A stretch of DNA of 64,000 nucleotides, from contig CDMY01000348.1 in NCBI GenBank assembly GCA_001179505.1, positions 1-64,000 of the forward strand. The letters are read 5' to 3'. A program made the position numbers and the translations under genes. The DNA comes from Vitrella brassicaformis CCMP3155 (lineage: Eukaryota > Protista > Chromerida). Position 1 is the first letter of the stretch. Each line of letters starts with the position of its first letter. Shown here piece by piece: positions 4,251 to 19,218 of the stretch. Below the pieces are notes generated by a model, which was not told where the DNA came from, did no database searches, and saw only the letters and a list, made by a program, of their open reading frames with translations.

Positions 4251-4619
4251 TAGCTGTGCGACCGTGACGGTGTGACTAGTACGGTGATCTGAGGCTCTGA
4301 GCGAAGCGAAAGCAAGGCTAAAAAGGATACGTGGAAAAAGTGTCTCGTGAATCGCGATTTCTCGCCGCTGGGCCCCTCGACGTTGGCCCCTCGCACCGTT
4401 ATAGCGTCTGGCAGCGACTTTTTGGGTGGTGGCTCGCACATGACATTCTGGCTGGACAGATTCATGTGATGTGCGATGAATAAGGTAGATGCCTGTAGGC
4501 CTGCCTGTACTCGTGGCTGGATGGGGATGTGCACGGCCGACTTGATGGATGCATGGGTGGCTTCATCGTGCACGCACACTCTTGACGCCACGCACGGCAC
4601 GCACACGAAATGCTGTCAA

Positions 4620-5200
4620 CATACACACGAGCACAACATCTCTGTCTGTCTGTCTGTCTGTCTGTGCTTGGGCTCGCCGAGTGGCTCGGCAGCTACAGCC
4701 CTCACACTTCGATCTGCCCACCGTGTGTGTGCCTTGCCTTGTACTTGCCCATCTCCCCTCTGCTGCTGTCTGTCCTCTCCTCTCAGCCACTGAGGGAGAG
4801 GGAGCGAGAGGAGAGGAAGAGGCCAGACAGTAGGAGGGAACGAAGGATCGAGGCAGACAGAGGCAGCAAGGCAGGCAGACAGACAGACATACAGACAGAC
4901 AGACAGACGAGTGAGTCAGCCATCAATCAGGCAGAGGTATACCATCCATCCATCCAGCACCACCACACACAGCAGTAGTGTGGGGCGTACTCGTTCCCTC
5001 TCTCTGCTATCGTTCATTCCCATACCTACCCAGTCAGTCGCCCCCCCACCCCCACACAAACACACACACACACACATGCATCCCATGCAGCCCCGTCAGC
5101 TATCCCCACCCACTGCCCGCCTGCTACAAAGGAATCCACCAAGATAGCCAGCCTGACGAACAATCACCATCACACACACACACACACACACACAGAGCAG
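4620..5200. repeat. Microsatellite-rich intergenic/UTR region, (TCTG)n, (GACA)n, (CA)n, (CCAT)n
   Basis: Visible simple repeats at ~4625, 4870-4910, 5060 and 5172-5194. Confidence 0.85.
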
Positions 5201-7482: not shown

Positions 7483-7729
7483 TGCTAGATGTAGATTTGC
7501 GCTGCGATGTCCCTCCCTGACGCACAAACACACAGCCCATGGGGGCCGCACTGATGGGAAATTCGCCTTCTCTCTGAATGGCGTACCTCAGGAACGACAG
7601 ACGCGATGATTCTTCTCACAATTGCTCAGAATTTTGCTTAGTCAACCACATCGATTCGGCCAGGTCACCGTGAGGTCGACGAACGAACGAACGAGGCCGG
7701 GGGTTAAGGAACGAACGAGGCCTCCGAAA

Positions 7730-7758
7730 GTTTAGGGTTTGACCCTAAACCCTAAACC
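7730..7758. promoter_or_regulatory. Telomere-like (TTTAGGG/CCCTAAA) telo-box palindrome
   Basis: GTTTAGGGT-TTG-ACCCTAAAC-CCTAAACC, ~250 bp upstream of the ATG at 7482. Confidence 0.5.
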
Positions 7759-8513
7759 TCCTTTGTAAGGCGGTGTGAGCGGTTTTATTGATATGAGGCC
7801 CTGATGTGGATAGTCACATGCAGCAGTACATAAACCCTGACTGACAGAGAGTGCTCTGTTCTCGATGGTGACTCGATGAAAGAACCCACCCATACATACA
7901 ACGTCTACATGACGTGGATGTCTTCACCATGAAAGAGACACGTGCCACTACCAACCAGCTGACACAAGTGCAGCCAGACATGGCATGGCCCTCATTGGAC
8001 TGCGAGAAGCAGCTCTTAAAACATATGGACACACTCCATCAAGCTGGTCTGTCTGTCTGTCTGTCTCTTTGTGTCAACGAAGGCAAGGCGATCCATCTGA
8101 TTGCAAAAAGGAGGGGAAAATGCGTGTGTGGACACGCTGATAAATAGACTGCGATAGCCGCCGATAGAGTGCGATGTACAAAGATAGATTGCTACGAAAA
8201 TGCTCCTTCCTCTGTAGACATCTCACACACGCCACTAGCCATACATGGCCATTCTTTCCATGGCCTTCCACGACAGCACCTAAAACGTATACAACCACAC
8301 ATCCATCAAGCTGTCTGCCTATAAGCATAGGCCAAGCTGGTCTACATGTATCTGACTGTCTGGCGCCTGATCGACTAACGGCCACGTGCGATGCCATACG
8401 GACACAGGAGGGAAAATCGCGTGTCTAGAGTGCGATAAACCTCTCAGGGAAGAAGTGAGTGGCCACAGAAATGAAGAAAGGTAGAGTCCGATATCGCCGT
8501 GTGTCATTGATCG

Positions 8514-11500
8514 TCATTGGTCATGTCGGCTGATGGTGCGGCGGATGAGCGATTTGATGACCAAGTCGAATATGCCCCCAAAGACGTCCTCTCGGGCCGC
8601 ATCGATGAGTGCCGCCTCCACCCGCCCCTCATCAGACCCATCGCTGTCTTGGGGCGGCTCCACCAGCAGTGACATGCTCATGCCTGATATCCCATACTGC
8701 ACACACACAAATGGAATCCATGTGCCGCATTCTGTGTGTTGTGTGTTGACTGACCTCTTTGATTTTGTCGATGACGTGTTGTAGTTTGCCGCCGTGCCGC
8801 TGCCTCTTGTCGGCCGCCATGACGCCCATCTCACGCTCGATGGCCGACACCAGACGTGCTGAGTCCCACAGCTGGCCGGCAGCCAGGCCTTCTCCGTCCT
8901 CCCTCACACCATCCCCAGGAGGCCACTGGACGGCCCCCCGTCGCTTGAGTGCCCGCAGGAAGCGCCGCAGCTGCGCTATGATGACGAGTGCGATGCCCTT
9001 TGGCAGGCCGAGGTCACGGCCGATGTCCTCATCCGCCGCCACACTGTCAGTGTCATCCAACATGTCCAGCAAACTCAGCGCCGAAACGATATCTAACGCC
9101 TACACACACAGAAGAGAAGACGACACACATACATTGAAGTCAGCCTGCCTTCACATGTGTCTGTGTGGTGTGCTGACCATGATGTTGTCGGCAACCTGTC
9201 GCATGTCGGGTGATGGGTGGGCCTTGAGCAGCTCCACCAGCTGAACCTTCGTCAACTCATCGAACGGAATCACAGCTCCCTCCCTCCCTCCATAACCATC
9301 GCCATGCCAACCATGCCGCCCCTCGCCCACCTCCCCATCCGCCATGCGACCGGCCTCATTCGGGTCTCGTTCCTGCGGCACATTGGGTGCGTGTGGGCCC
9401 TTGACGGGCTGATAGGGCGGCGGCCGCATCGTCATGTCGATGTCGGCCAGCTCGTCACCACCCGGCAGCTGCTCGTCATCTGCCGCCTTGAGCGGCTTGG
9501 GCAGGGCTGGTGTGGTGTGCTGCTGATTGGTCTTCTGAAGCTGTTTGATGAATCGACTGGCGGCCTCCTTGATGTCCTCGCCGTCACGCTGCCCAACCAT
9601 GGCCGGCAGCTCATGACGCACAAACGAGTCGATGGACGCAAAGCTGAGAGCTGGGACGGCCGCCAACATCGCCCCAATGTTGTGACCCACTTGACCATAC
9701 TCGCGACAGAGGACCATCCGCTGGGCGTGTGTCATGGGCTGCTGGTCCTCAGTGCCGTGAATGTCCATCCCCTGCTGGCGGCATGCCCAAGCGGCATCGA
9801 TGGCCGCCCCCATGGCCTCCCTGGTGGCCGCTGAGAGGGGCACCGACTGCACTGGTGACCCCGGCAGGACCACCTCGACGGCCAGCTGCGTCAGGGCAGA
9901 CCCACTCCTGAACCGCAGACACAGAGGCGTTTCGGGATGGGCTCGGCCGAGTGCCTCCAGCTGCTGGTAGAAGTGGCGAATCAAATGCCCCTGCTGGACC
10001 GGGGACACACGAGGGCCGCGACTGGCCGTGCGATGCGTCGGCAGCCCACCAGGGGGGCCCTCCCGCAGCCAACTGGAGGCCTCCGGCGAGGGATTGTGGT
10101 TGGGTCGGCCGTCTCTCCGGTCCTGGCGCTTGGTGTCAGGGCGAGCCGTAGGGTGCAAGGGAGCACCGCCCCTCAGACCACCTTGACGCAGCTGAGGCGC
10201 CAGTCGCTGTTTGACGGGCAGAGGATCGTCGCCATCGTCGGCACTTCTTGAGTCAGCCGGGTCGCCATGGCTCTCCGCCCCTCCCTCTGACGTGTCCAAT
10301 CGCTCCATCCTCTGTCTGTGCGCAATGGCGGCCTCCTTAGCGCCCTCGAAGCCAAGCTGCTTGACGTAGAAGGACTTGCGCTTCTGCTTGCCGGCCTCCT
10401 GCCAGCTGACCTGCCATGCGTTGACTTTCTTGTGGTAGCTGACGCCCTCGACGCCGCTCTGATGCTTGGATCGTCGCAAGATGGAAGCCCGGCCGGTGCT
10501 CTCCATCTCGCGACGATGCTGCTCGGCCAACCCCTGATACACGTGACAGACAGAACGAGGGCTGGCGGTGTTGGGCTGCGCGAGCGGGGTGGTGCTGTGC
10601 TGCACCTTAGCTTTGTCGAATCCATGTTTTCTGACGTAGAAATACTTGTACTCCCGCTTGCCGTCCCTCGTGTTGCACCACTTGGCTAACCACGCCTGAT
10701 GCTGCTCACACCAGTGGACGCCCGACACGTCAGACTGGTGCTCGGCAGCCCTTCGTATGCCCTGGCCGGCCTTGGTTGTCTTGTGACTGTTGGGGCTCGG
10801 CCGTCTCTCCGCTACGGATGGGCTCCTGCTGGCGAGAGCCGCATCTCGGCGGCGGTGCTTGCGAGAGCGGCTGTGGTCGGATGACTTGTCACGCACCGAT
10901 AGGCCCAGCTCCTCCTCGCCCCCCTGCTGCTGCCGGTCGAGCCATGAGAGGTCGATAATGGTCGCACGGTCGCCGAGTTGGTCACGGTGGATGCTGTTGC
11001 GGTACGCCACACATTGGCGGAGAGCATCGATGATGCTGCCACGGGAGTCGGGATCATCGATGACGAACTTGCGGAAGCCCAGGTGCTTGCCCTGGCTGTC
11101 AAAGTACGCGGCGAAACGTCTCGGTGAAGTCATACAGACGCCGAATCTGACGAGACGCCAAAGATAGGATGCAAAGATATGTCGCTCCCCCTTGTCGTGT
11201 GTAGCAATGCTCACCCTCCATTGGCCTGTGGGCAGGCGTCGTTGAAGCGTCGTATCAGTCGGTCCACCAGGGCCGTGGCGAGAACAGGTCCAGTCAGTCC
11301 ATCCAGCTCGGCCTCATCGCGCGCCCTCTTGCGGTCGACGGTCTTGCGCTTGGGGGCGGGGCGACGCGGTGGGTCCCCTTGGCCTTTCATGCGACGCGTC
11401 TGACGAGTGCCCGTTGAGTGGGGATGGGCGTCCACCGGGGCATCGCTGTTGTGCTTGCATTTGGGACAGAGCCACTGCCCCTCCGGGACGGCCGTCAGCT

Positions 11501-14500
11501 GCACGCAGTAGGTGTGGTAGGCCGCAGAGCAACGACGCTTGTCACACAACAGCAGAAGCTTCTCATTGTCGCCCTTGCCGCACTCCCAGCACCGCAACGA
11601 ATCATCTGAGCCACTGCCCGCCTCGTCGATGCCGCCGCTCTGGGCGTTTGGCAACTCACCATCCGCCAGCCCATTCAGATCCCTCCCCCTATGTGGCTGC
11701 TTGTGGCGGTGAACCATCTGCGTGCGACGGGGGCGAGACGGTGGGCACGGGCCACGTCCGTCCTGGGAGTCGCTGTCACGTCCCTCCCCACCGGATGATG
11801 GTGACGAAGAGCCCCGCCACTCTGAGTCTGAGGATGATCGGTATTCAGCAGCCCCTCGCTTGCCGCCACCGCTGGAAGGGAGGGCGCCTCGGGCCCTCTG
11901 GGTATCTGGAGGGCCTGATATCTCCTTCGCGTCGTCATTGTGCCGCTTCACTAAGGGACGCTTCCTTCGCCCCTTGCCCACCAGATGGCCGAGCCGGGGG
12001 ATGCTCTCATCAGATGACCCATCGTGGTGCCCATCGGCATCGCCCATGTGGTCGTCGAGCCAGCTGATGTCGATCAAGATAGCATCGCTGCCGAGGGCCT
12101 CAGTGAAGACCTCATTCCGGCGCAAAACACCCTGGCGAAAGGAGTTGACGATGTCGACACGGCGGATGGGGCGGCCCGTGAGCGATGTCATGTACTCACA
12201 CACGTCCTTGCCGTTCCGAGTGATGGCGACCTTGAACCGGTGGCCATGCTGGTGCCAGCTGATACCCAGCCTGAATGATGGCATGCCACACAAGGAGAAA
12301 ACGGTAGGTAAACAGAGGGCTTGTGTACGTGGATCGCGATCCTCACTCACCCGCCTCTGCCTTTGAATGTGTAGAGTTCCGGCTGCTCACGTCTTGTCCT
12401 CTCGATGAGCAGGTGTGCGAATGCGTCAACCTCTCTCGCACTGAGCCCCTTCGACCCGCCTCGATCGACGCCAGCTGAGCTGCCGGGGCAGCTGTCCTGC
12501 TGATCCCAATGCCGCGATGACGCCATGCTGCCGCCCCGCATATCGATGTCATTCTCCTGTGCAGCGGGGGGCGACGGCTGAGGGCGGGAAGCTTCGGCTC
12601 GACCGTGGCCGGCGGCAGAGTCGTGAGAAGAAGGTGGCTGATGGACGGGCTGGCTGTCGCCGCCCAGGGGTGTGTAGTGCCTCTCCTCCACCTCACGGCG
12701 GTATGCGATGGCTGCCTGTTTGGCAGGCTCATAGCCGAGCTTAGCGACGGAGAAGTGCTTGTTTATCCTCCTGCCGCCCTCCGACCAGGAAGCCACCCAG
12801 CGCTTGTATGTCTCGTCGTAGCTGACGCCCCGCACGCCGCTCTGGTGGCCAGATCTCTGCTTGCCTGCTGCTACCCGCCTGGTGCGCTCCATCTCACGAC
12901 GATGCCGCTCGGCCAACTCCTGATACACACAACACACACGAGAAGAACTTGACGATGGCAGTTGGCGTTGCTGTTGTCAGTACCTTTGCTTTGTCGAAGC
13001 CGTGCTCCTTGACGTAGAAGTACTTGTCTCCTGCTTGCCGTCGTTCTTTCTGCACCACTTCGCTTGCCAGTACTGACCCCGCTCAGACCAGTGGACGCCC
13101 TGCACGGCTGACTGATGCTCGGCAGGTTTGCGGCTGACGGTCTTGCCCTTGCCGGCCTTGCGCCTCGGCTGTCCGTCACGCGAAGACACGTCATCAGCCC
13201 AATCCATGTCGTCATCGCCACCAACACCTCCCAAATCCGCCCCGCCACCGTCATGATGCGTCGGACCCTTGGAGGCTGCACCAGCACTCGTGCCTTTGTC
13301 GACAGCATGCTTCTGTTTCGGCTGTGGGTGCAGATTGATGCGCCGCATTCCCATGCTGACTACACCGCCGCCGGCCGCAGTGTTGCAGTGCTGCGCTGCC
13401 TGGGCGAAGGCACGCAGGATGAGCCGGGATGAGGTCACGTCAGACACACTGAAGACACGCTCGTCGTGCCTGGCCTCCCCGTCTTGTCGGTAAGCCACGA
13501 AGGTGGCCTCCTCGCCGCGCCACTCGAGACCAAAACTGAGTGAAGCACACACCAAGGAAGAGGAAAATGAGTGGCCTTTCATGAGACTTCATCGTTCTGC
13601 CCACCTGTCGGCATCGTCTTGGTGTGCGTCCGCCAGCTGCCGCTGTGCCTGCTCCACCAGGCTGGCTGCCAGAGCATGGCCGCCCCCTTCACTCAGCTTC
13701 GCCGACACAATTCTTTCCTTCCCACCGCCTGACCTGTCGCGACGGCGTCTGGCCCCCGGTCGATGCGACAGCTGCTCGCCCTCACGACGGCGATGTGTCT
13801 CCGGTGTGGGTCGAATGGGAGGCGGCATGAGTTCATCCTGACTGTCCCTCCTGCTGCCCGCGTCTTCACGATGGCGCTTGGCTGCTGGCCGGTCGATGAG
13901 CAGCTCGTTCTCAGAGCTGGACGAGTCCGCTATTGGCCGCTCACTGACACGATAGGAGGGCCTGCATCTGTGGCGGCGCCCAGGCTGAATATGGGGCGCC
14001 ATGGGGTCATTGCTGTCGAGTGTGTGGTCACTGGGGTCCTCAGACAGAGACGGGGGCGGCATGGGCTTGCGCCTCGCTCCGCTGCGGCGGCGCGTCCGAG
14101 GTCGATTGCAGCCATGGGGACCGATGTCATCGAGCCAGCTGATGTCCAGGGGTGCGGAGGCCTCTCCCTCACTAGCAGTGCTCAGACGGTTGAGCTCCTC
14201 GACGGCGCGGCGAAAAGCGTCAATGACGGCCGAGCGGGAGCTGAGGTCGACCACCGGCACATCGAGAATGCGCTCAGCTGCACCCTCCCCGAGAGAGGAC
14301 GGCACACGGACACGGAAGCCGCCGTCCTGCCAACACAGCCCGCATGACCTGCCCGAAAAAAAAGAACCAATCCCACACACACATCACACACGTGACAAAT
14401 CTGGCCCTTCCTTGTCTGTCTTACTCGTCGCTGTTGAGGACTTCGACGAGGGCAGCTGCCAGGTCGCCGCCCTCCATCACACCCACGTGTGGCCTGCTGC

Positions 14501-16367
14501 TGGGGGGGCCGTGGCGGCGCGGCGAAAGAATCTCATCATCATCATCATCATCATTGTGGCGGCTGCGGGAACGGCTCTCTTCTCCCGTCGCCTCGGACTC
14601 TGAAGTGTGGCGCCGCTGCTCCATCTCTTGTCGGTATGCGATGGCCGCCTGTTTCGCCTTCTCGTAGCCCAGCTGGTTGATGGAGAAGGACTTGCTCCTC
14701 CTCCTGTCCCCCACCTGCCAGCTGGCCACCCATGCGTTGGCTCCCTTGTTGCAGTGGACGCCTCGCACGCCACTCTGGTGCTCCGACCGCTTCCTTGCTG
14801 CTGCCCTGCCCGTGCGCTCCATCTTGCGACGATGCTCCTCGGCCAACGCCTGAAGGAGCATCAGCATCACGTGTGCGGGCTGTGTTCTTTCTTGTCTCTT
14901 GCACCCAAGCTTTGTCGCCGTGCTTCTTGGCTTCAGTACCTTAGCTTTGTCAAAGCCGTGCTCCTTGACGTGGAACCGCTTGTTCTTGGGGTCCCCTCTC
15001 TCGTTCCACGATGACACCCAGACCATGCCCTTTTTCGCCCAGAAGACGCCCGGCACGTCAGACTGGTACCTGCCCTCGGTGCCATCGGGCTCCTTCTCGG
15101 GCGTGGGCGGCGGGGCCCCGTCGTGGGCTGAGGGGCTGCTGTCGAGCGGATGTGTGTGGCGATCCTTCAGCAACGGGCTGCGATCAGTGGCTGGCTCCTC
15201 ATCGGCGGGCCCTGACAGCTGGGTCAGGTCAGCTGCCTCCACGGTGGGTCGTGGCCTGTTCCTGTGATGACCCTTCTCGGCTGACGCCTTCTTGGCTGAC
15301 AAACCTGAAGAAGACAAACAATACCGACAGCCGCAATGGCTGAATGCCGATCGAGGATGGGAACGGTGTGGCTGTTGACCTCTGTCGGGAGGTGGCTCAG
15401 ACGTCCCACCACCAGTAGGGGGCGTACTCGAGGGACCGGGGGCCCTGACGGCCACCGCGTCGGTGGCGCAGCCAGGAGCGCCGCTCGACTCTGCACACAT
15501 GACAACGCAACACATGCACACGATGATACGTATCGTCCTCTCAGCTGTCTTCCGTCCTTGTCCGGGCTTACTTGGTGGACGTGTCCACTCTATGACGGTC
15601 CGCTCGACGCCATCGATGACGTCAGACACACTCTCAAAGCGATCGTCGGTGTCTGCCGTGCCGTTGTGGACGGCCAGCAGAAGACCCCCCAATATGCTCG
15701 TGTCCCACCCCCTCCCGCCGTGGTGACGGCTGACAACCCCCCGCACCCACACCGGAGGCCGATTGTCCCCATACCCCCGCCATGCCGTCACCGTATACCG
15801 CTGACCGTCGCCCTCGCCGGTAACACTGAACTCAAAACCATCGTACTCGGGCAAGTATTTGTTGCACAGCACCTCCACGAGGGGAGTTGCTGTGGGTGCG
15901 CCCGCTCCACTCGTGGATGAGCTGCCCACTTCCATTCTCGTCGGACCATCGTGTGGTGTGTGGTGCTGAGGGGTGGGGGAGCGATGCTGTCCTGCTGAGA
16001 TGACGCTCTTGTGTGCTTCTGGTGATGGTGGGTCTGCGGGTGCTGGTGTTGGTGCGCCTCGTTTGACAGCCGCGGGGACGAGACCAGTACGGACAGTTGC
16101 TGCTGCATCAGTCTGCCGCGGCTGGCTTGCTGATGCCGCATGGGATTCAGAGCCCGCGTATAGCTGTTGTGCAGCTGCTTCTGACGGTGGGTGAGGCGCC
16201 TCCGCGTCAAGAATGGATGAACGGTTGTGCTGATGTGTTCCCACTGCTGGTGCAGCCAATAATGACGGCCCATGAGTGGCTGAGGCTGCTTCTTCTGGTG
16301 CAGCTCGAGAGCCGTCCTCAGCAGCTGATGGTGCGGCGCCGGGAGGATGAGTATGTTGACTCGCCAT
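8514..16367 (-). CDS. Giant ApiAP2-type transcription factor: 6 canonical AP2, ~6 divergent AP2-like, PHD finger, 2 SAM-like; one apparent frameshift
   Basis: ORFs 14421-16373, 13589-14380, 12977-13582, 12347-12937, 11211-12350, 9151-11214, 8632-9072 and 8514-8834 join through GT-AG introns of consistent phase. AP2 signature e.g. HQSGVRGVSYDETYKRWVASWSEGGRRINKHFSVAKLGYEPAKQAAIAYR. Confidence 0.85.
8540..9270 (-). other. Two tandem SAM-like domains
   Basis: Spliced FDELTKVQLVELL...VADNIM|ALDIVSALSLLDML...DEDIGRDLGLPKGIALVIIAQL, and LWDSARLVSAI...VIDKIKE|YGISGMSMSLL. Pattern match by eye. Confidence 0.6.
10310..10739 (-). other. AP2 doublet 3
   Basis: HQSDVSGVHWCEQHQAWLAKW...YFYVRKHGFDKAK|GLAEQHR and HQSGVEGVSYHKKVNAWQVSW...FYVKQLGFEGAKEAAIAHR. 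Confidence 0.92.
11457..11592 (-). other. PHD finger (C4HC3)
   Basis: CWECGKGDNEKLLLLCDKRRCSAAYHTYCVQLTAVPEGQWLCPKC. Confidence 0.95.
12685..13118 (-). other. AP2 doublet 2 (first domain frameshifted)
   Basis: HQSAVQGVHWSERGQYWQAKW... and HQSGVRGVSYDETYKRWVASW... Confidence 0.9.
14620..15070 (-). other. AP2 doublet 1
   Basis: YQSDVPGVFW...KRFHVKEHGFDKAK|ALAEEHR and HQSGVRGVHC...KSFSINQLGYEKAKQAAIAYR. Confidence 0.92.
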
Positions 16368-16593
16368 CGTCACTTTTGTTGCTGCCGTCGCGTCGGCTTG
16401 CTCATAGGCCCTCCCTTGGCGCCGTCATGGGCACAGATAACGGTAGATGCGGTGTCTGACGTTGACTCGATGAAGCAGCCGACAGCAAAACCGCCAGATC
16501 TCTGCTCAATTGTAGGAGATCTGGGGAAGAGGCGGACTCTTTGCCGGGGGGAGTCACAATTGCTCAGTCAACCGATTCCACCGCATGGCGATC

Positions 16594-16653: not shown

Positions 16654-19218
16654 ATGCTTCCCTTGCAGAGTTGTGCGCTCAGACGCCTGACCAGGATCAT
16701 CCACTCCAACGACATTCGGTGCGCCTCGTCAGCAGCTCTATCCATCACCGAGGCCGCACGAGAGCACTCTGCCGCACCAGGCCCTCCCCATGCCTACGAT
16801 GCAACACCCGCGCCAGCCACGCAAGCCCCTTCCCCCGCTCCCATTTCCCCCTCCCTGAGTGACGCTGGTGCTGTGACCGTGGTGCACATGGCAGGGCGGC
16901 TGGCGTCGTCAACTACAGATGAGTCCAGCACTCAGCTGTCGGCCCACGAGATCATCGACAGGTGGAAGGCGCTCTCAGCCCGAGCCGTTGCACTCATCGA
17001 CCGGGGCGCACCGCTGCACGAGCTGACCTTCCTGCTGCTGCATCTTGCAGAGGCGGACCTCAGCCCAACTCAGCGGAGAGCTCTGGCCTTCCCATCTCGG
17101 TTCAAGGAGGCCCTACTGAAGGGCGAGAATGACACGGACAGCCTCAGCGAAGACGAGCTCGCCATTGCAGCCGACTGTCTTCAGCAATTGCGGCTGACGG
17201 ACAAGTCCACAGCTCTCTTCTTCTACCGCCGCTTCGGCGCGACTCTCCGGTTCCGCCAGCTGAGCGTGCGAAACCTGGTGCGGCTGTCGCATGGGATGCG
17301 TCAGTTTCGGTTCTTGTACCCTGTGAAGCGGCAATTCGTGGAGAAGCTGATGCGTGTGCTGCTCAAGAGGCGGGGCGAGCTGCAGGAGAGCCAGCTGCTG
17401 GTGGATGGGCTGCTGGCGGTCGGGAGGATGACCAAAGTCAACCCTGCTACATGTGGAAAGATACAGGTGAGAAAGAAACGACAAGAGAGAAATGGCAGCT
17501 AGTCGAAAGGTCTCTCGTCCTGGTCGTCACATCCAGGAGCTGTTGGCTTCCCACGTGCCCCGCATGGTGATCGAGGAGCTGGCTCTCGTGCCGTCCGTCA
17601 CGGCCGCCCTCGACCTCACAGACGAGGAGTTCTTCACCACGTACACCAACCACCTCGTCCAATCGTTGCCCATCCTCTCGTCGCGCGAGCTGCTTCTCGT
17701 CTTCCGAGGCCTCCTTCACTCTCGCGTCGGCCCGGCAGGCACCCGCCGGGCAGGGCTGCCCGCATTCCTGCAAGACGTCTTGTCGCCCCGGCTGTCCAGG
17801 CTAAGTGGGGCTGTGTTGGTCCGCCTGGCAGTGGTGTGCAGTCGGCTGGCGTGGTCACACCCCGGGCAGCGACAGCTCTGCCGCAGCGATCAGGCCATCA
17901 GGGAGGGGCTGAGTGTGTTCGTGTCGCGGCTGTTCGAGCGGATGGGGGCCATCCTGAATGTCATTAGCGGCCGGCAGCTGGTGATGGTGGCCAACGCTGC
18001 CGCCCACCTGGACGAGTATTGGACGAGGGATGCCGCAAAGAGGCGGCACTTTCTGGAGGCGCTTTACCGGGAGATTGCGTGTCAGCTGCGGCTGGTGGTC
18101 CTCCCCAATCGGCAGATGGAGCCGACAGCAGCAGAAGGAGGGGGAGTGATGACCGTCTACACGTCCCACGACCTCGCCGTCCTGCTGCGGGCCTTCTCCT
18201 TCTCAATGCATGCCCTTATCGGCTCACCAGATGAGGGCCAGAAGGCTCTCACGGCCTGCCAGGACTTCCTGACAGGATTGTTCAAGAAGGTCTGGGAGTT
18301 CCGTCGCACCAGTGTGGAGAGCTTTCACGAGGAGGATCTCGATGTGTTGGTTGCGTCGGCTTCACGCATCGTCCGGTGTGCTGCCGCAGCTGTGGAAGCT
18401 GACGACAGCCTCCTGGGCGATCCGGCATCGAATTTGGCAAAAGGTTCGACGCTGGAGCAGCCATGTGTGGAGCCAGCCGTGGACTTCCTGATGCAGCTTG
18501 AAGCTGAGAGGGAGATTCCCAGACAGTGTGCACCGGATGCTCTCCTTGCAATGGTGAGTGAAGAGACTCACAGACCGACCGTATCTGTGATGACGTTTTG
18601 TGTGCGTTGTGCTGTGTTTGTAGGTGACCCTTTTGTGTGTGCGGCCCTCTCATCTGAGTCGCCTCTCCCCAACGGTGGCCTCGCTGATGCACACCAGCAT
18701 GCAGCAAGAGGCCAGACCAGACGAAGAAGGGGAGGAAGATTCACCGCAGGAACTGTCCAATGATGTCAGCTCTCTCGTCCCTCTGCGCGTCTGCCTCGTC
18801 GCTCATACCATCATGGACAGAGCCGAGCTGCCGGAGAGACCACCTAGCCCGCCAAGCGAGAGGAATGCGCGTCGCCCACCGGTGGATGGTAAGGCCATTG
18901 TCGATGCCATCTTGGATCGGCGGAGGGTGCTGCGCCCGGCTGACTTCGCATTCTGGGGCCAGGGGCGATTTGTGTCTGTGCTGAGGGGTGGGACAGCTGT
19001 CGAGGAGCTGATGGAGAGGCTGTGGGCGCACAAAGACGACCTGCAGGTGAGTGAGTGGATGGAATGAACACGTTCAGCTTTTTATGGTGTCAATGATGCG
19101 CTGCGTGAATATGCTTGTGTGTGTGTGTGTTCAGGATGACGTGACTCGCGAGGCGCTGATGGACCTGATGCTGGCACTGAGCAAGGACGATGCGGAAGGT
19201 GCGCAAGAGCTGCCTTGA
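16654..19218 (+). CDS. Helical-repeat (HPR/OPR-like) putative mitochondrial RNA-binding protein
   Basis: Arg/Ser-rich presequence MLPLQSCALRRLTRIIHS; repeats such as LSEDELAIAADCL, LSVRNLVRLSHGM, LSSRELLLVFRGL, ISGRQLVMVANAA, YTSHDLAVLLRAF; GT-AG introns near 17468, 18554 and 19048. Confidence 0.7.

What the first reader, a model, noticed from the sequence alone, without database searches (positions are those of the whole stretch)
8514..16367. Giant AP2 protein uniting DNA binding, histone reading and SAM polymerisation
Seen: ORFs that look like separate genes splice into one ~2,200-aa model ordered d1-[AP2-AP2]-d2-d3-[AP2-AP2]-d4-PHD-d5-[AP2-AP2]-d6-helical-SAM-SAM. Established: apicomplexan ApiAP2 proteins usually have 1-3 AP2 domains and rarely other recognisable domains; PHD fingers read histone H3 tails; SAM domains can polymerise, as in Polyhomeotic and TEL. 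Inference: a self-contained, Polycomb-like chromatin-spreading regulator, a fusion of functions that apicomplexans supply through separate subunits. I know of no described protein with this architecture. This is the best candidate for an undescribed system in the window.
Basis: partly seen in the sequence, partly recalled or inferred. Interest (0 to 1): 0.88.

Follow-up and report, generated by a model that had tools for sequence, protein, structure and literature searches.

The report
Giant modular AP2–PHD–SAM-like regulator gene
This is an already annotated but unstudied gene of the alga Vitrella brassicaformis, one of a species-only family of giant DNA-binding proteins that also carry a histone-reading finger and one SAM-like domain, and this copy has a one-base deletion that breaks one DNA-binding domain.

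Summary
On the minus strand, 13 exons (8514-15935, possibly from ATG 16367) reproduce exactly a public 2,187-aa Vitrella brassicaformis CCMP3155 protein (P0018).

- **AP2 and PHD:** solid (AP2 230 bits; PHD E 1.6e-11 to KDM5A PHD1).
- **First "SAM":** no sequence-profile match. A moderate AlphaFold model (pLDDT 70) has SAM domains as its 14 best structural matches among 48,161 PDB chains (Z 5.0-6.3).
- **Second "SAM":** unsupported.
- **Four spacers:** one repeated, probably AP2-like domain (hhalign P 0.0013).

The gene is not unique. Vitrella has at least 8 giant paralogs with the same start and end modules, in tandem clusters, probably the published cluster of 50 apiAP2 genes. The C-terminal module was found only in Vitrella among 1.84 billion proteins. 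The scan noted similar genes on two other pieces of this genome.

This copy lacks one base in the third AP2; the annotation hides this with an atypical 47-nt intron. The polymerising, Polycomb-like mechanism is untested. Transcript evidence covers only the 3' end.

Verdict: a new variant of ApiAP2 regulators, of moderate interest.

The parts
8514..16367 (-). Whole gene unit. The annotated CDS (P0018, 2,187 aa) runs 15935 to 8514 with the stop codon at 8514-8516. A possible 144-codon N-terminal extension starts at ATG 16367.
   Evidence: The exon set reproduces P0018 exactly and the gene is located on CDMY01000348.1. The N-terminal extension aligns to P0021 residues 1-337 and to P0013. The 5' flank 16264-16510 is conserved with the starts of paralog genes.
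15573..15875 (-). d1: family-specific N-terminal domain, fold unknown.
   Evidence: The family HMM finds it at the start of 10 members. No Pfam match. hhalign against AP2 or dL gives P 0.16.
14610..15077 (-). AP2 doublet 1 (AP2-1 15077-14805, split by the 90-nt intron 14939-14850; AP2-2 14789-14610).
   Evidence: Pfam PF00847; family HMM.
   Evidence: Family HMM E 2e-25. The dL profile against the AP2 profile gives hhalign P 0.0013 over 51 columns in register.
   Evidence: Family HMM E 1e-22.
12878..13126 (-). AP2-3, broken. One base is missing at about 13028-13031 (GAG-ACAAG, where 11 paralogous units have GAGNNCAAG). The annotation removes 13077-13031 as a 47-nt intron, which deletes the strands 'QYWQAKWCRKNDGKQ'.
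   Evidence: Frame analysis; DNA alignment with 11 paralogous units; comparison with P0018. The 47-nt piece has no T in its last 25 nt, unlike the 11 other introns.
12677..12856 (-). AP2-4.
   Evidence: Pfam PF00847, best stretch in P0018 865-917.
   Evidence: Family HMM E 1.5e-26.
11451..11594 (-). PHD finger with a complete C4HC3 pattern, most like readers of unmodified H3K4.
   Evidence: Pfam PF00628 at 27.9-30.4 bits against a cut-off of 24. PDB matches: KDM5A PHD1 E 1.6e-11, BAZ2B 2.6e-11, ATXR5 3.2e-11.
   Evidence: Family HMM E 1.8e-33.
10294..10749 (-). AP2 doublet 3 (AP2-5 10749-10489, split by the 72-nt intron 10605-10534; AP2-6 10473-10294).
   Evidence: Pfam PF00847.
9496..10008 (-). 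d6 (10008-9766) and the helical domain (9753-9496): family-specific, function unknown.
   Evidence: Family HMMs. No Pfam match. The helical domain is also present in P0015.
8920..9267 (-). SAM1: a five-helix domain with a predicted SAM fold, split by the 78-nt intron 9177-9100.
   Evidence: AlphaFold2 pLDDT 70.3 with five helices. VIA wide search: ranks 1-14 are all SAM domains, Z 5.0-6.3. PHC3 SAM Z 5.7. 44 of the 100 nearest language-model clusters are SAM_1/SAM_2. No Pfam or PDB sequence-profile match.
8517..8880 (-). It is split by the 58-nt intron 8754-8697.
   Evidence: Nearest paralogs are 88-92% identical over its last exon, 8696-8517, and many columns are invariant. Language-model scores are at most 0.58. 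hhalign against SAM1 gives P 0.036. Intron removal is seen in probable-RNA run X1 and in paralog transcripts.

Best explanation
The stretch is one gene of Vitrella brassicaformis CCMP3155, already in public databases as an uncharacterised 2,187-aa protein. It belongs to a Vitrella-only, recently expanded and tandemly clustered family of giant modular ApiAP2 proteins.

Full-length members share a fixed N-terminal module (d1) and a fixed C-terminal block (d6, helical, SAM-fold, conserved C-terminal helices). Between them lies a variable string of AP2 doublets and AP2-like 'dL' units, often with one PHD finger.

The most likely function is inferred, not shown. It would be a multivalent sequence-specific DNA binder (three AP2 doublets). 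A PHD finger of the unmodified-H3K4-reading type would tie it to chromatin. The conserved C-terminal SAM-fold block would let it associate with itself or with its paralogs.

In this copy, one missing base in the third AP2 breaks the frame. The locus therefore makes one of three things:
- a truncated 1,013-aa product;
- a protein lacking the core of AP2-3, if the atypical 47-nt piece is really spliced out;
- the intact protein, if the deletion is an assembly error.
For: Gene model:
- The exon set equals P0018 and the locus is annotated as one gene.
- The order of modules is the same as in P0010, which is 50-61% identical over its whole length. The start and end modules are shared by P0010, P0014, P0018 and P0019.
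- Junctions DNIM|AL and KIKE|YG are read through in MMETSP transcripts of paralogs. The 58-nt intron is removed in probable-RNA run X1.

Domains:
- AP2: six stretches, 229.9 bits.
- PHD: passes the Pfam cut-off, and E is 1.6e-11 to KDM5A PHD1.
- SAM fold.
- dL is AP2-like: hhalign P 0.0013, with 12 control pairs at P 0.025 or worse.

Family:
- The C-terminal module was found in 8 cluster representatives out of 1.84 billion, all from Vitrella.
- There are tandem arrays on two other contigs and mosaic DNA similarity of 68-96%.
- dN/dS is 0.32-0.81 with low dS.
- A cluster of 50 apiAP2 genes in Vitrella has been published (PMC4501334).

Deletion.
Against: - No transcript evidence covers the gene beyond its last ~1 kb. 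Run X1 covers only 8600-9625, and part of that comes from paralogs.
- SAM is not detectable by any sequence profile. Foldseek gives no significant match, with best E 0.9-1.5. The Z scores of 5-6 lie in the range the tool calls 'middling' for helical models. The model itself is only moderate (pLDDT 70) and rests on 11 close paralogs.
- The PHD ligand, any oligomerisation and DNA binding are all inferred from relatives.
- dN/dS of about 0.5 indicates only weak constraint, so some copies, perhaps this one, may be decaying.
Confidence: 0.62

Rival explanations
1. One reading: a self-contained Polycomb-like regulator. AP2 arrays would target it, the PHD would read H3 tails, and two SAM domains would polymerise head-to-tail to spread a repressed state along chromatin.
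For: AP2 and PHD are real. One SAM-fold domain is predicted, and many of its best structural matches are polymerising SAMs: PHC3, Scm/Sfmbt, L3MBTL3, tankyrase, BICC1, SARM1. The C-terminal block is the most conserved part of the family.
Against: A shared fold does not show polymerisation, and many SAM domains are monomeric or bind other partners. The second SAM has no support. Nothing here bears on repression or spreading. The PHD resembles readers of unmodified H3K4, which is not a Polycomb-type mark reader. This copy has a broken frame.
Confidence: 0.12
2. This particular copy is a young pseudogene of the family. The one-base deletion is real, the 47-nt 'intron' is a gene predictor's patch, and the mRNA, if made, ends in a premature stop after 1,013 codons.
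For: All 11 paralogous AP2 units keep the base that is missing here. The 47-nt piece is coding in those units. It is shorter than the other 11 introns (58-90 nt) and has no T in its last 25 nt, whereas the others are T/GT-rich there. Three probable DNA runs show no inserted base at that place (table 4). The family also has other degenerate copies (L001/P0006).
Against: The 1,365 codons downstream remain open and the rest of AP2-3 is intact, so the change is either very recent or an assembly error in a highly repeated region. The DNA runs may be the reads the assembly was built from, and I could not confirm that a contig from this locus itself spans the site. The donor GTCAGT is of the same type as two real donors in this gene.
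Confidence: 0.4
3. The stretch holds several independent genes that only look joinable.
For: In paralogous loci the public annotation does cut similar arrays into back-to-back models: 2226+440+1197+180+515 aa and 1849+572+863 aa. RNA evidence here covers only the 3' end, and MMETSP transcripts encode only the last ~233 aa.
Against: All exon junctions keep the frame through canonical short introns with no in-frame stop apart from the deletion. The d1-start and Ct-end rule holds in four full-length paralogs. Coverage limited to the 3' end is expected from poly-A-primed, shallow libraries of a 7-kb mRNA.
Confidence: 0.08

Closest known systems
ApiAP2 transcription factors of Apicomplexa and chromerids (Balaji et al. 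2005; the Vitrella cluster of 50 homologous apiAP2 genes in Woo et al. 2015, PMC4501334)
   Same: Pfam AP2 domains well above the cut-off, arranged as tandem doublets with a conserved linker. A large protein with long low-complexity linkers. Lineage-specific duplication, as described for chromerids.
   Different: Six canonical AP2 plus four AP2-like dL units, a PHD finger and a SAM-fold domain in one chain. From my own knowledge, apicomplexan members usually have 1-4 AP2 domains and few other domains. The C-terminal block was found in no organism other than Vitrella.
TEL/ETV6 and Yan (ETS factors with a polymerising SAM/Pointed domain); plant LEAFY with its N-terminal SAM oligomerisation domain
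   Same: A sequence-specific DNA-binding domain and a SAM-fold domain in the same polypeptide. These are the nearest working analogy for 'a DNA binder that self-associates'.
   Different: No sequence relationship was detected. The DNA-binding domains are AP2, not ETS or LEAFY. The SAM-fold domain is C-terminal and followed by a further conserved helical segment. Oligomerisation is untested here.
Polyhomeotic/PHC3, Scm, Sfmbt, L3MBTL3 and SAMD1 SAM domains
   Same: Among the best structural matches of the SAM1 model: PHC3 Z 5.7 with 69 of 70 residues aligned, Scm-Sfmbt entry 5j8y Z 5.4, L3MBTL3 Z 5.3, SAMD1 Z 5.0.
   Different: Sequence identity is 9-20%, and there is no profile match to Pfam SAM_1 or SAM_2 even at E up to 10. 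Nothing shows a mid-loop/end-helix interface.
PHD fingers that read unmodified H3K4: KDM5A PHD1, KDM5B PHD1, BAZ2A/BAZ2B PHD, ATXR5 PHD
   Same: These are the best sequence matches in the PDB (E 1.6e-11 to 9e-10), sharing the 'CxxCgkgdnEdkLLLCD-C...YHtyC...vP.G.W.CPkC' pattern.
   Different: Here the finger sits inside a multi-AP2 protein, not a demethylase, remodeller subunit or methyltransferase. Ligand preference is inferred from my knowledge of those relatives only.
KRAB zinc-finger gene clusters of vertebrates (analogy only)
   Same: A large, young, tandemly clustered family in one lineage. It has a variable array of DNA-binding units joined to a conserved non-DNA-binding end, with mosaic copies and pseudogenes.
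   Different: Unrelated domains. No evidence of any link to transposons or of diversifying selection on DNA-contact residues.

Membership tests
ApiAP2 / AP2-ERF superfamily | At least one AP2 domain passing the Pfam PF00847 gathering score (33.3 bits) | tested here: met
   P0018 scores 229.9 bits over six stretches. The individual ORFs score 58-77 bits.
ApiAP2 / AP2-ERF superfamily | Encoded in a myzozoan (apicomplexan or chromerid) nuclear genome | tested here: met
   The window encodes P0018 of Vitrella brassicaformis CCMP3155, contig CDMY01000348.1.
ApiAP2 / AP2-ERF superfamily | Sequence-specific DNA binding by the AP2 domains | not testable with these tools
   Needs a protein-binding microarray, DAP-seq or EMSA.
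PHD finger | Complete C4HC3 zinc-ligand pattern and a Pfam PF00628 score above the cut-off (24 bits) | tested here: met
   The sequence reads C-x2-C-x11-C-x4-C-x4-H-x2-C-x12-C-x2-C. Pfam scores are 27.9-30.4 bits. PDB match E 1.6e-11.
PHD finger | Binding of a histone H3 tail, and which methylation state | not testable with these tools
   The closest relatives read H3K4me0 (my own knowledge). Needs peptide binding assays.
SAM domain (Pfam SAM_1/SAM_2 and related SAM families) | Sequence-profile match to a SAM family | tested here: not met
   No SAM family appears at E up to 5-10 in P0001, P0004, P0018 or the isolated segments. No SAM chain is found in the PDB by profile search.
SAM domain (Pfam SAM_1/SAM_2 and related SAM families) | Compact five-helix SAM fold (first candidate, P0018 1983-2072) | tested here: inconclusive
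   The model has pLDDT 70.3, pTM 0.56 and five helices. The 14 best of 48,161 chains are all SAM domains, aligned over whole domains, but Z is only 5.0-6.3. Foldseek finds nothing significant. The language-model neighbours lean towards SAM, with scores under 0.9.
SAM domain (Pfam SAM_1/SAM_2 and related SAM families) | SAM fold of the second candidate (P0018 2086-2187) | tested here: inconclusive
   The only model has pLDDT 38. Language-model scores are at most 0.58. hhalign against SAM1 gives P 0.036 over 23 columns. Nothing supports it.
SAM domain (Pfam SAM_1/SAM_2 and related SAM families) | Head-to-tail polymerisation through mid-loop and end-helix surfaces | not testable with these tools
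   Needs SEC-MALS, EM or a crystal structure of the purified domain.
Polycomb-like repressive system | Association with a repressive histone mark or modifier, and spreading over chromatin domains | not testable with these tools
   No enzymatic domain is present in the protein. No chromatin data were available.

The most novel reading that the evidence does not exclude
Vitrella has evolved its own large family (about 50 genes) of giant regulators. A variable, rapidly reshuffled array of AP2 and AP2-like DNA-binding units is coupled to a fixed chromatin-reading and SAM-based assembly end. Paralogs would then co-assemble on chromatin, and the family would diversify quickly, functionally parallel to KRAB zinc-finger clusters, perhaps in genome defence. 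In that case the SAM-fold block would be a previously unrecognised, sequence-divergent SAM family.
Probability: 0.15. Interest if true: 0.75.

Novelty: new variant of a known kind. Interest (0 to 1): 0.45.

Why it matters
ApiAP2 proteins are the main transcription factors of malaria and toxoplasmosis parasites, and they usually recruit chromatin readers and assembly factors as separate subunits. A free-living relative that fuses many AP2 domains with a PHD reader and a SAM-fold domain in one chain gives a natural model of how such modules work together. It also shows how a transcription-factor family can grow by shuffling modules.

The practical gains here are smaller. The report gives a corrected reading of a public gene model: a hidden frameshift, a possible longer N-terminus, and one SAM-fold and one AP2-like domain that Pfam (and the PDB sequence search, for the SAM-fold block) did not detect. 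It also gives a domain rule that can be used to re-annotate the fragmented paralogs.

Tried and rejected
- **Pfam on the raw ORFs and on spliced paralogs:** no SAM family at E up to 10.
- **Profile search of the C-terminal alignment against PDB sequences:** only a spurious glycine/arginine-rich match.
- **AlphaFold2 of the whole last 232 residues:** pLDDT 38, unusable, so no fold search was run on it.
- **Foldseek of the SAM1 model against the PDB and Swiss-Prot models:** no match under E 0.9.
- **RNA evidence:** the first two calls to find runs failed because the service was busy. The only probable RNA run that was laid (X1) covers just 8600-9625 and includes paralog reads. Runs X2-X4 behave like genomic DNA, since they carry the introns. 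Their 'joints' are contigs of paralogs, not splicing.
- **Alternative donor at 9154 for the intron before SAM helix 3:** it gives an immediate stop, and paralog transcripts read DNIM|AL, so I rejected it.
- **Real splicing as a way round the frameshift:** no other GT-AG pair of plausible length keeps the frame.
- **d1, d6, the helical domain and Ct against AP2, dL or SAM1 by hhalign:** no relationship (P 0.025-0.26).
- **A mobile-element origin of the family:** considered, but no transposase, integrase or nuclease domain is present.
- **Neighbouring ORFs:** no Pfam match.
- **Third database-wide protein search:** not used, because the chance of finding a transcript across the deletion was low.

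Full report
**What is there**

The region is 60-66% G+C. It carries a string of long minus-strand ORFs.
- Pfam finds two AP2 domains in ORF 14421-16373, one in 12347-12937 and two in 9151-11214.
- It finds a PHD finger in 11211-12350.
- The ORFs are separated by short stretches with clear GT...AG ends and T/GT-rich 3' parts.

**Gene model**

I joined the ORFs through ten such introns. The frame stayed open from ATG 16367 to the stop at 8514-8516, except at one point near 13030.

Database searches then identified the organism and the public model.
- The best relatives are all from Vitrella brassicaformis CCMP3155.
- One of them, P0018 (2,187 aa, named 'PHD-type domain-containing protein' by UniProt), is this gene. 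It is 98.2% identical to my first model over its full length.
- P0018 differs from my model in only three ways: a later start, one further 75-nt intron, and a short skipped piece.
- With these three changes, a set of 13 exons reproduces P0018 exactly.
- The locus is annotated as one gene of 7,422 nt on contig CDMY01000348.1.

**The frameshift**

DNA alignment of the first AP2 of the second doublet with 11 paralogous AP2 units shows that this copy lacks one base. It reads GAG-ACAAG where all the others read GAGNNCAAG.

The public model avoids the resulting frameshift by removing 13077-13031 as a 47-nt intron. That deletes 'QYWQAKWCRKNDGKQ', the central strands of the AP2 domain. Three things argue that this piece is not a real intron.
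- It is coding in every paralogous unit.
- It is shorter than the other 11 introns, which are 58-90 nt.
- It has no T in its last 25 nt, whereas the others are T/GT-rich there.

If it is not spliced, translation from 16367 ends after 1,013 residues.

Three runs that behave as genomic DNA show no inserted base there (table 4). They may be the reads the assembly was made from, and I could not confirm that a contig from this locus itself spans the site. The 1,365 codons downstream are intact. So the change is either very recent or an assembly error.

**Is it one gene?**

Direct RNA evidence is thin.
- The one probable RNA run that was laid (X1) covers only 8600-9625. It confirms removal of the 58-nt intron 8754-8697.
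- MMETSP transcripts of close paralogs (88-89% identical) read straight through the last two junctions.

The stronger argument is comparative. Family HMMs give the order d1-AP2-AP2-dL-dL-AP2-AP2-dL-PHD-dL-AP2-AP2-d6-hel-SAM1-Ct for P0018.
- P0010 (2,058 aa) has nearly the same order.
- P0014 (2,622 aa) and P0019 (2,296 aa) also start with d1 and end with d6-hel-SAM1-Ct.
- P0010 aligns with this gene in the same order along its whole length at 50-61% identity.
- The 5' flank and the stop codon line up with the starts and stops of paralog genes.

**The domains**

- **AP2.** Six stretches, 229.9 bits.
- **PHD.** The C4HC3 pattern is complete and the Pfam score is above the cut-off. The best solved relatives are KDM5A PHD1 (E 1.6e-11), BAZ2B, ATXR5 and KDM5B PHD1. 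From my own knowledge, all of these read the unmodified H3K4 tail.
- **Spacers d2-d5.** These are one repeated domain, 37 copies in 16 family proteins. Its profile aligns with the family's AP2 profile over 51 columns in register at P 0.0013. Twelve control pairs gave P 0.025 or worse over short stretches. This supports an earlier scan note (s1-197260) that they are AP2-like.
- **d1, d6 and the helical domain.** These remain unassigned.

**The SAM claim**

No sequence profile supports it. A language-model search of the first candidate (P0018 1988-2072) put SAM_1/SAM_2 clusters in 44 of the 100 nearest, with all scores under 0.9.

Folding the last 232 residues failed (pLDDT 38). Folding residues 1983-2076 alone gave a moderate model: pLDDT 70.3, pTM 0.56, five helices.
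- Foldseek found nothing significant.
- An aligner that does not depend on Foldseek ranked SAM domains in places 1 to 14 of 48,161 chains. These were SARM1, CNK2, TIR-1, BAR, the Scm-Sfmbt SAM heterodimer entry (5j8y), Hyphen, Shank3, liprin, L3MBTL3, tankyrase, neurabin and BICC1. Z was 5.0-6.3 over whole domains.
- PHC3 SAM came first in the re-alignment of Foldseek's own list.

The Z values are modest, but the ranking is one-sided. I rate a SAM-like fold at about two in three.

The second candidate has no support. It is nevertheless the most conserved part of the family.

**The family**

- A full HMMER scan of 1.84 billion representative proteins with the C-terminal block found eight, all from Vitrella.
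- Paralogs sit in tandem arrays.
- They share mosaic DNA similarity of 68-96% with this locus.
- Nearest paralogous segments differ with dN/dS 0.32-0.81 at low dS. This indicates recent duplication or gene conversion under weak constraint.
- Woo et al. 2015 reported 'one cluster of 50 homologous apiAP2 genes' in Vitrella without describing the extra domains (PMC4501334).
- The scan has noted two similar genes elsewhere in this genome.

**Reading**

Shown:
- one annotated gene;
- six AP2 domains, one PHD finger and four AP2-like repeats;
- a Vitrella-only C-terminal block;
- a one-base deletion in this copy.

Probable: one SAM-fold domain.

Inferred only: multivalent DNA binding, reading of unmodified H3K4, and self- or paralog-association through the C-terminus.

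Unsupported: a second SAM, polymerisation and Polycomb-like spreading.

The thing is a new variant of a known kind. Interest is moderate, mainly as a family rather than as this single, possibly broken, copy.

Noticed in passing
L003:47-17721 and L005:1664-13195: In two paralogous loci the public annotation places same-strand gene models back to back with gaps under about 100 nt (except ~870 nt before the last model in L003): 2226+440+1197+180+515 aa and 1849+572+863 aa. By the rule that genes start with d1 and end with Ct, several of these look like pieces of larger genes or fused tandem copies.
   Followed up: partly
L001:166-2733 (protein P0006, contig CDMY01000961.1): This is a truncated copy, about 80-94% identical to window 13537-10876. 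Its public protein reads out of frame through an AP2 domain ('WPSSIVSRWSALAG...'). Its DNA jumps from the dL-4 region to the helical-domain region and then to sequence like window 4413-5087.
   Followed up: partly
window introns 15571-15491, 14424-14349, 12983-12920, 9177-9100, 8754-8697: Most introns of the gene have a GT-rich 3' half (0.55-0.84 G+T), and some have an AC-rich 5' half, as an earlier scan note said for another place in the window. Predicted folding is not unusual: z -1.9 to +0.9 against mononucleotide shuffles.
   Followed up: partly
protein P0014 (2,622 aa, another contig): The most divergent full-length member has ten AP2-like dL units and only one AP2 doublet. So dL units can replace AP2 doublets in the variable middle of the protein.
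   Followed up: no
protein P0022 (1,504 aa): This paralog's model goes straight from the glycine-rich linker to the Ct segment and lacks SAM1. That is either a deletion or a skipped exon in the model.
   Followed up: no
window 7500-8500: G+C drops to 49-52% just downstream of the stop codon, against 60-66% in the gene. This fits a 3' untranslated or intergenic stretch.
   Followed up: no
window 16654-19218 (+ strand): A 778-aa gene is annotated in the opposite direction, starting only 287 nt from ATG 16367 or 718 nt from the annotated start at 15935. Its long ORFs have no Pfam match.
   Followed up: partly
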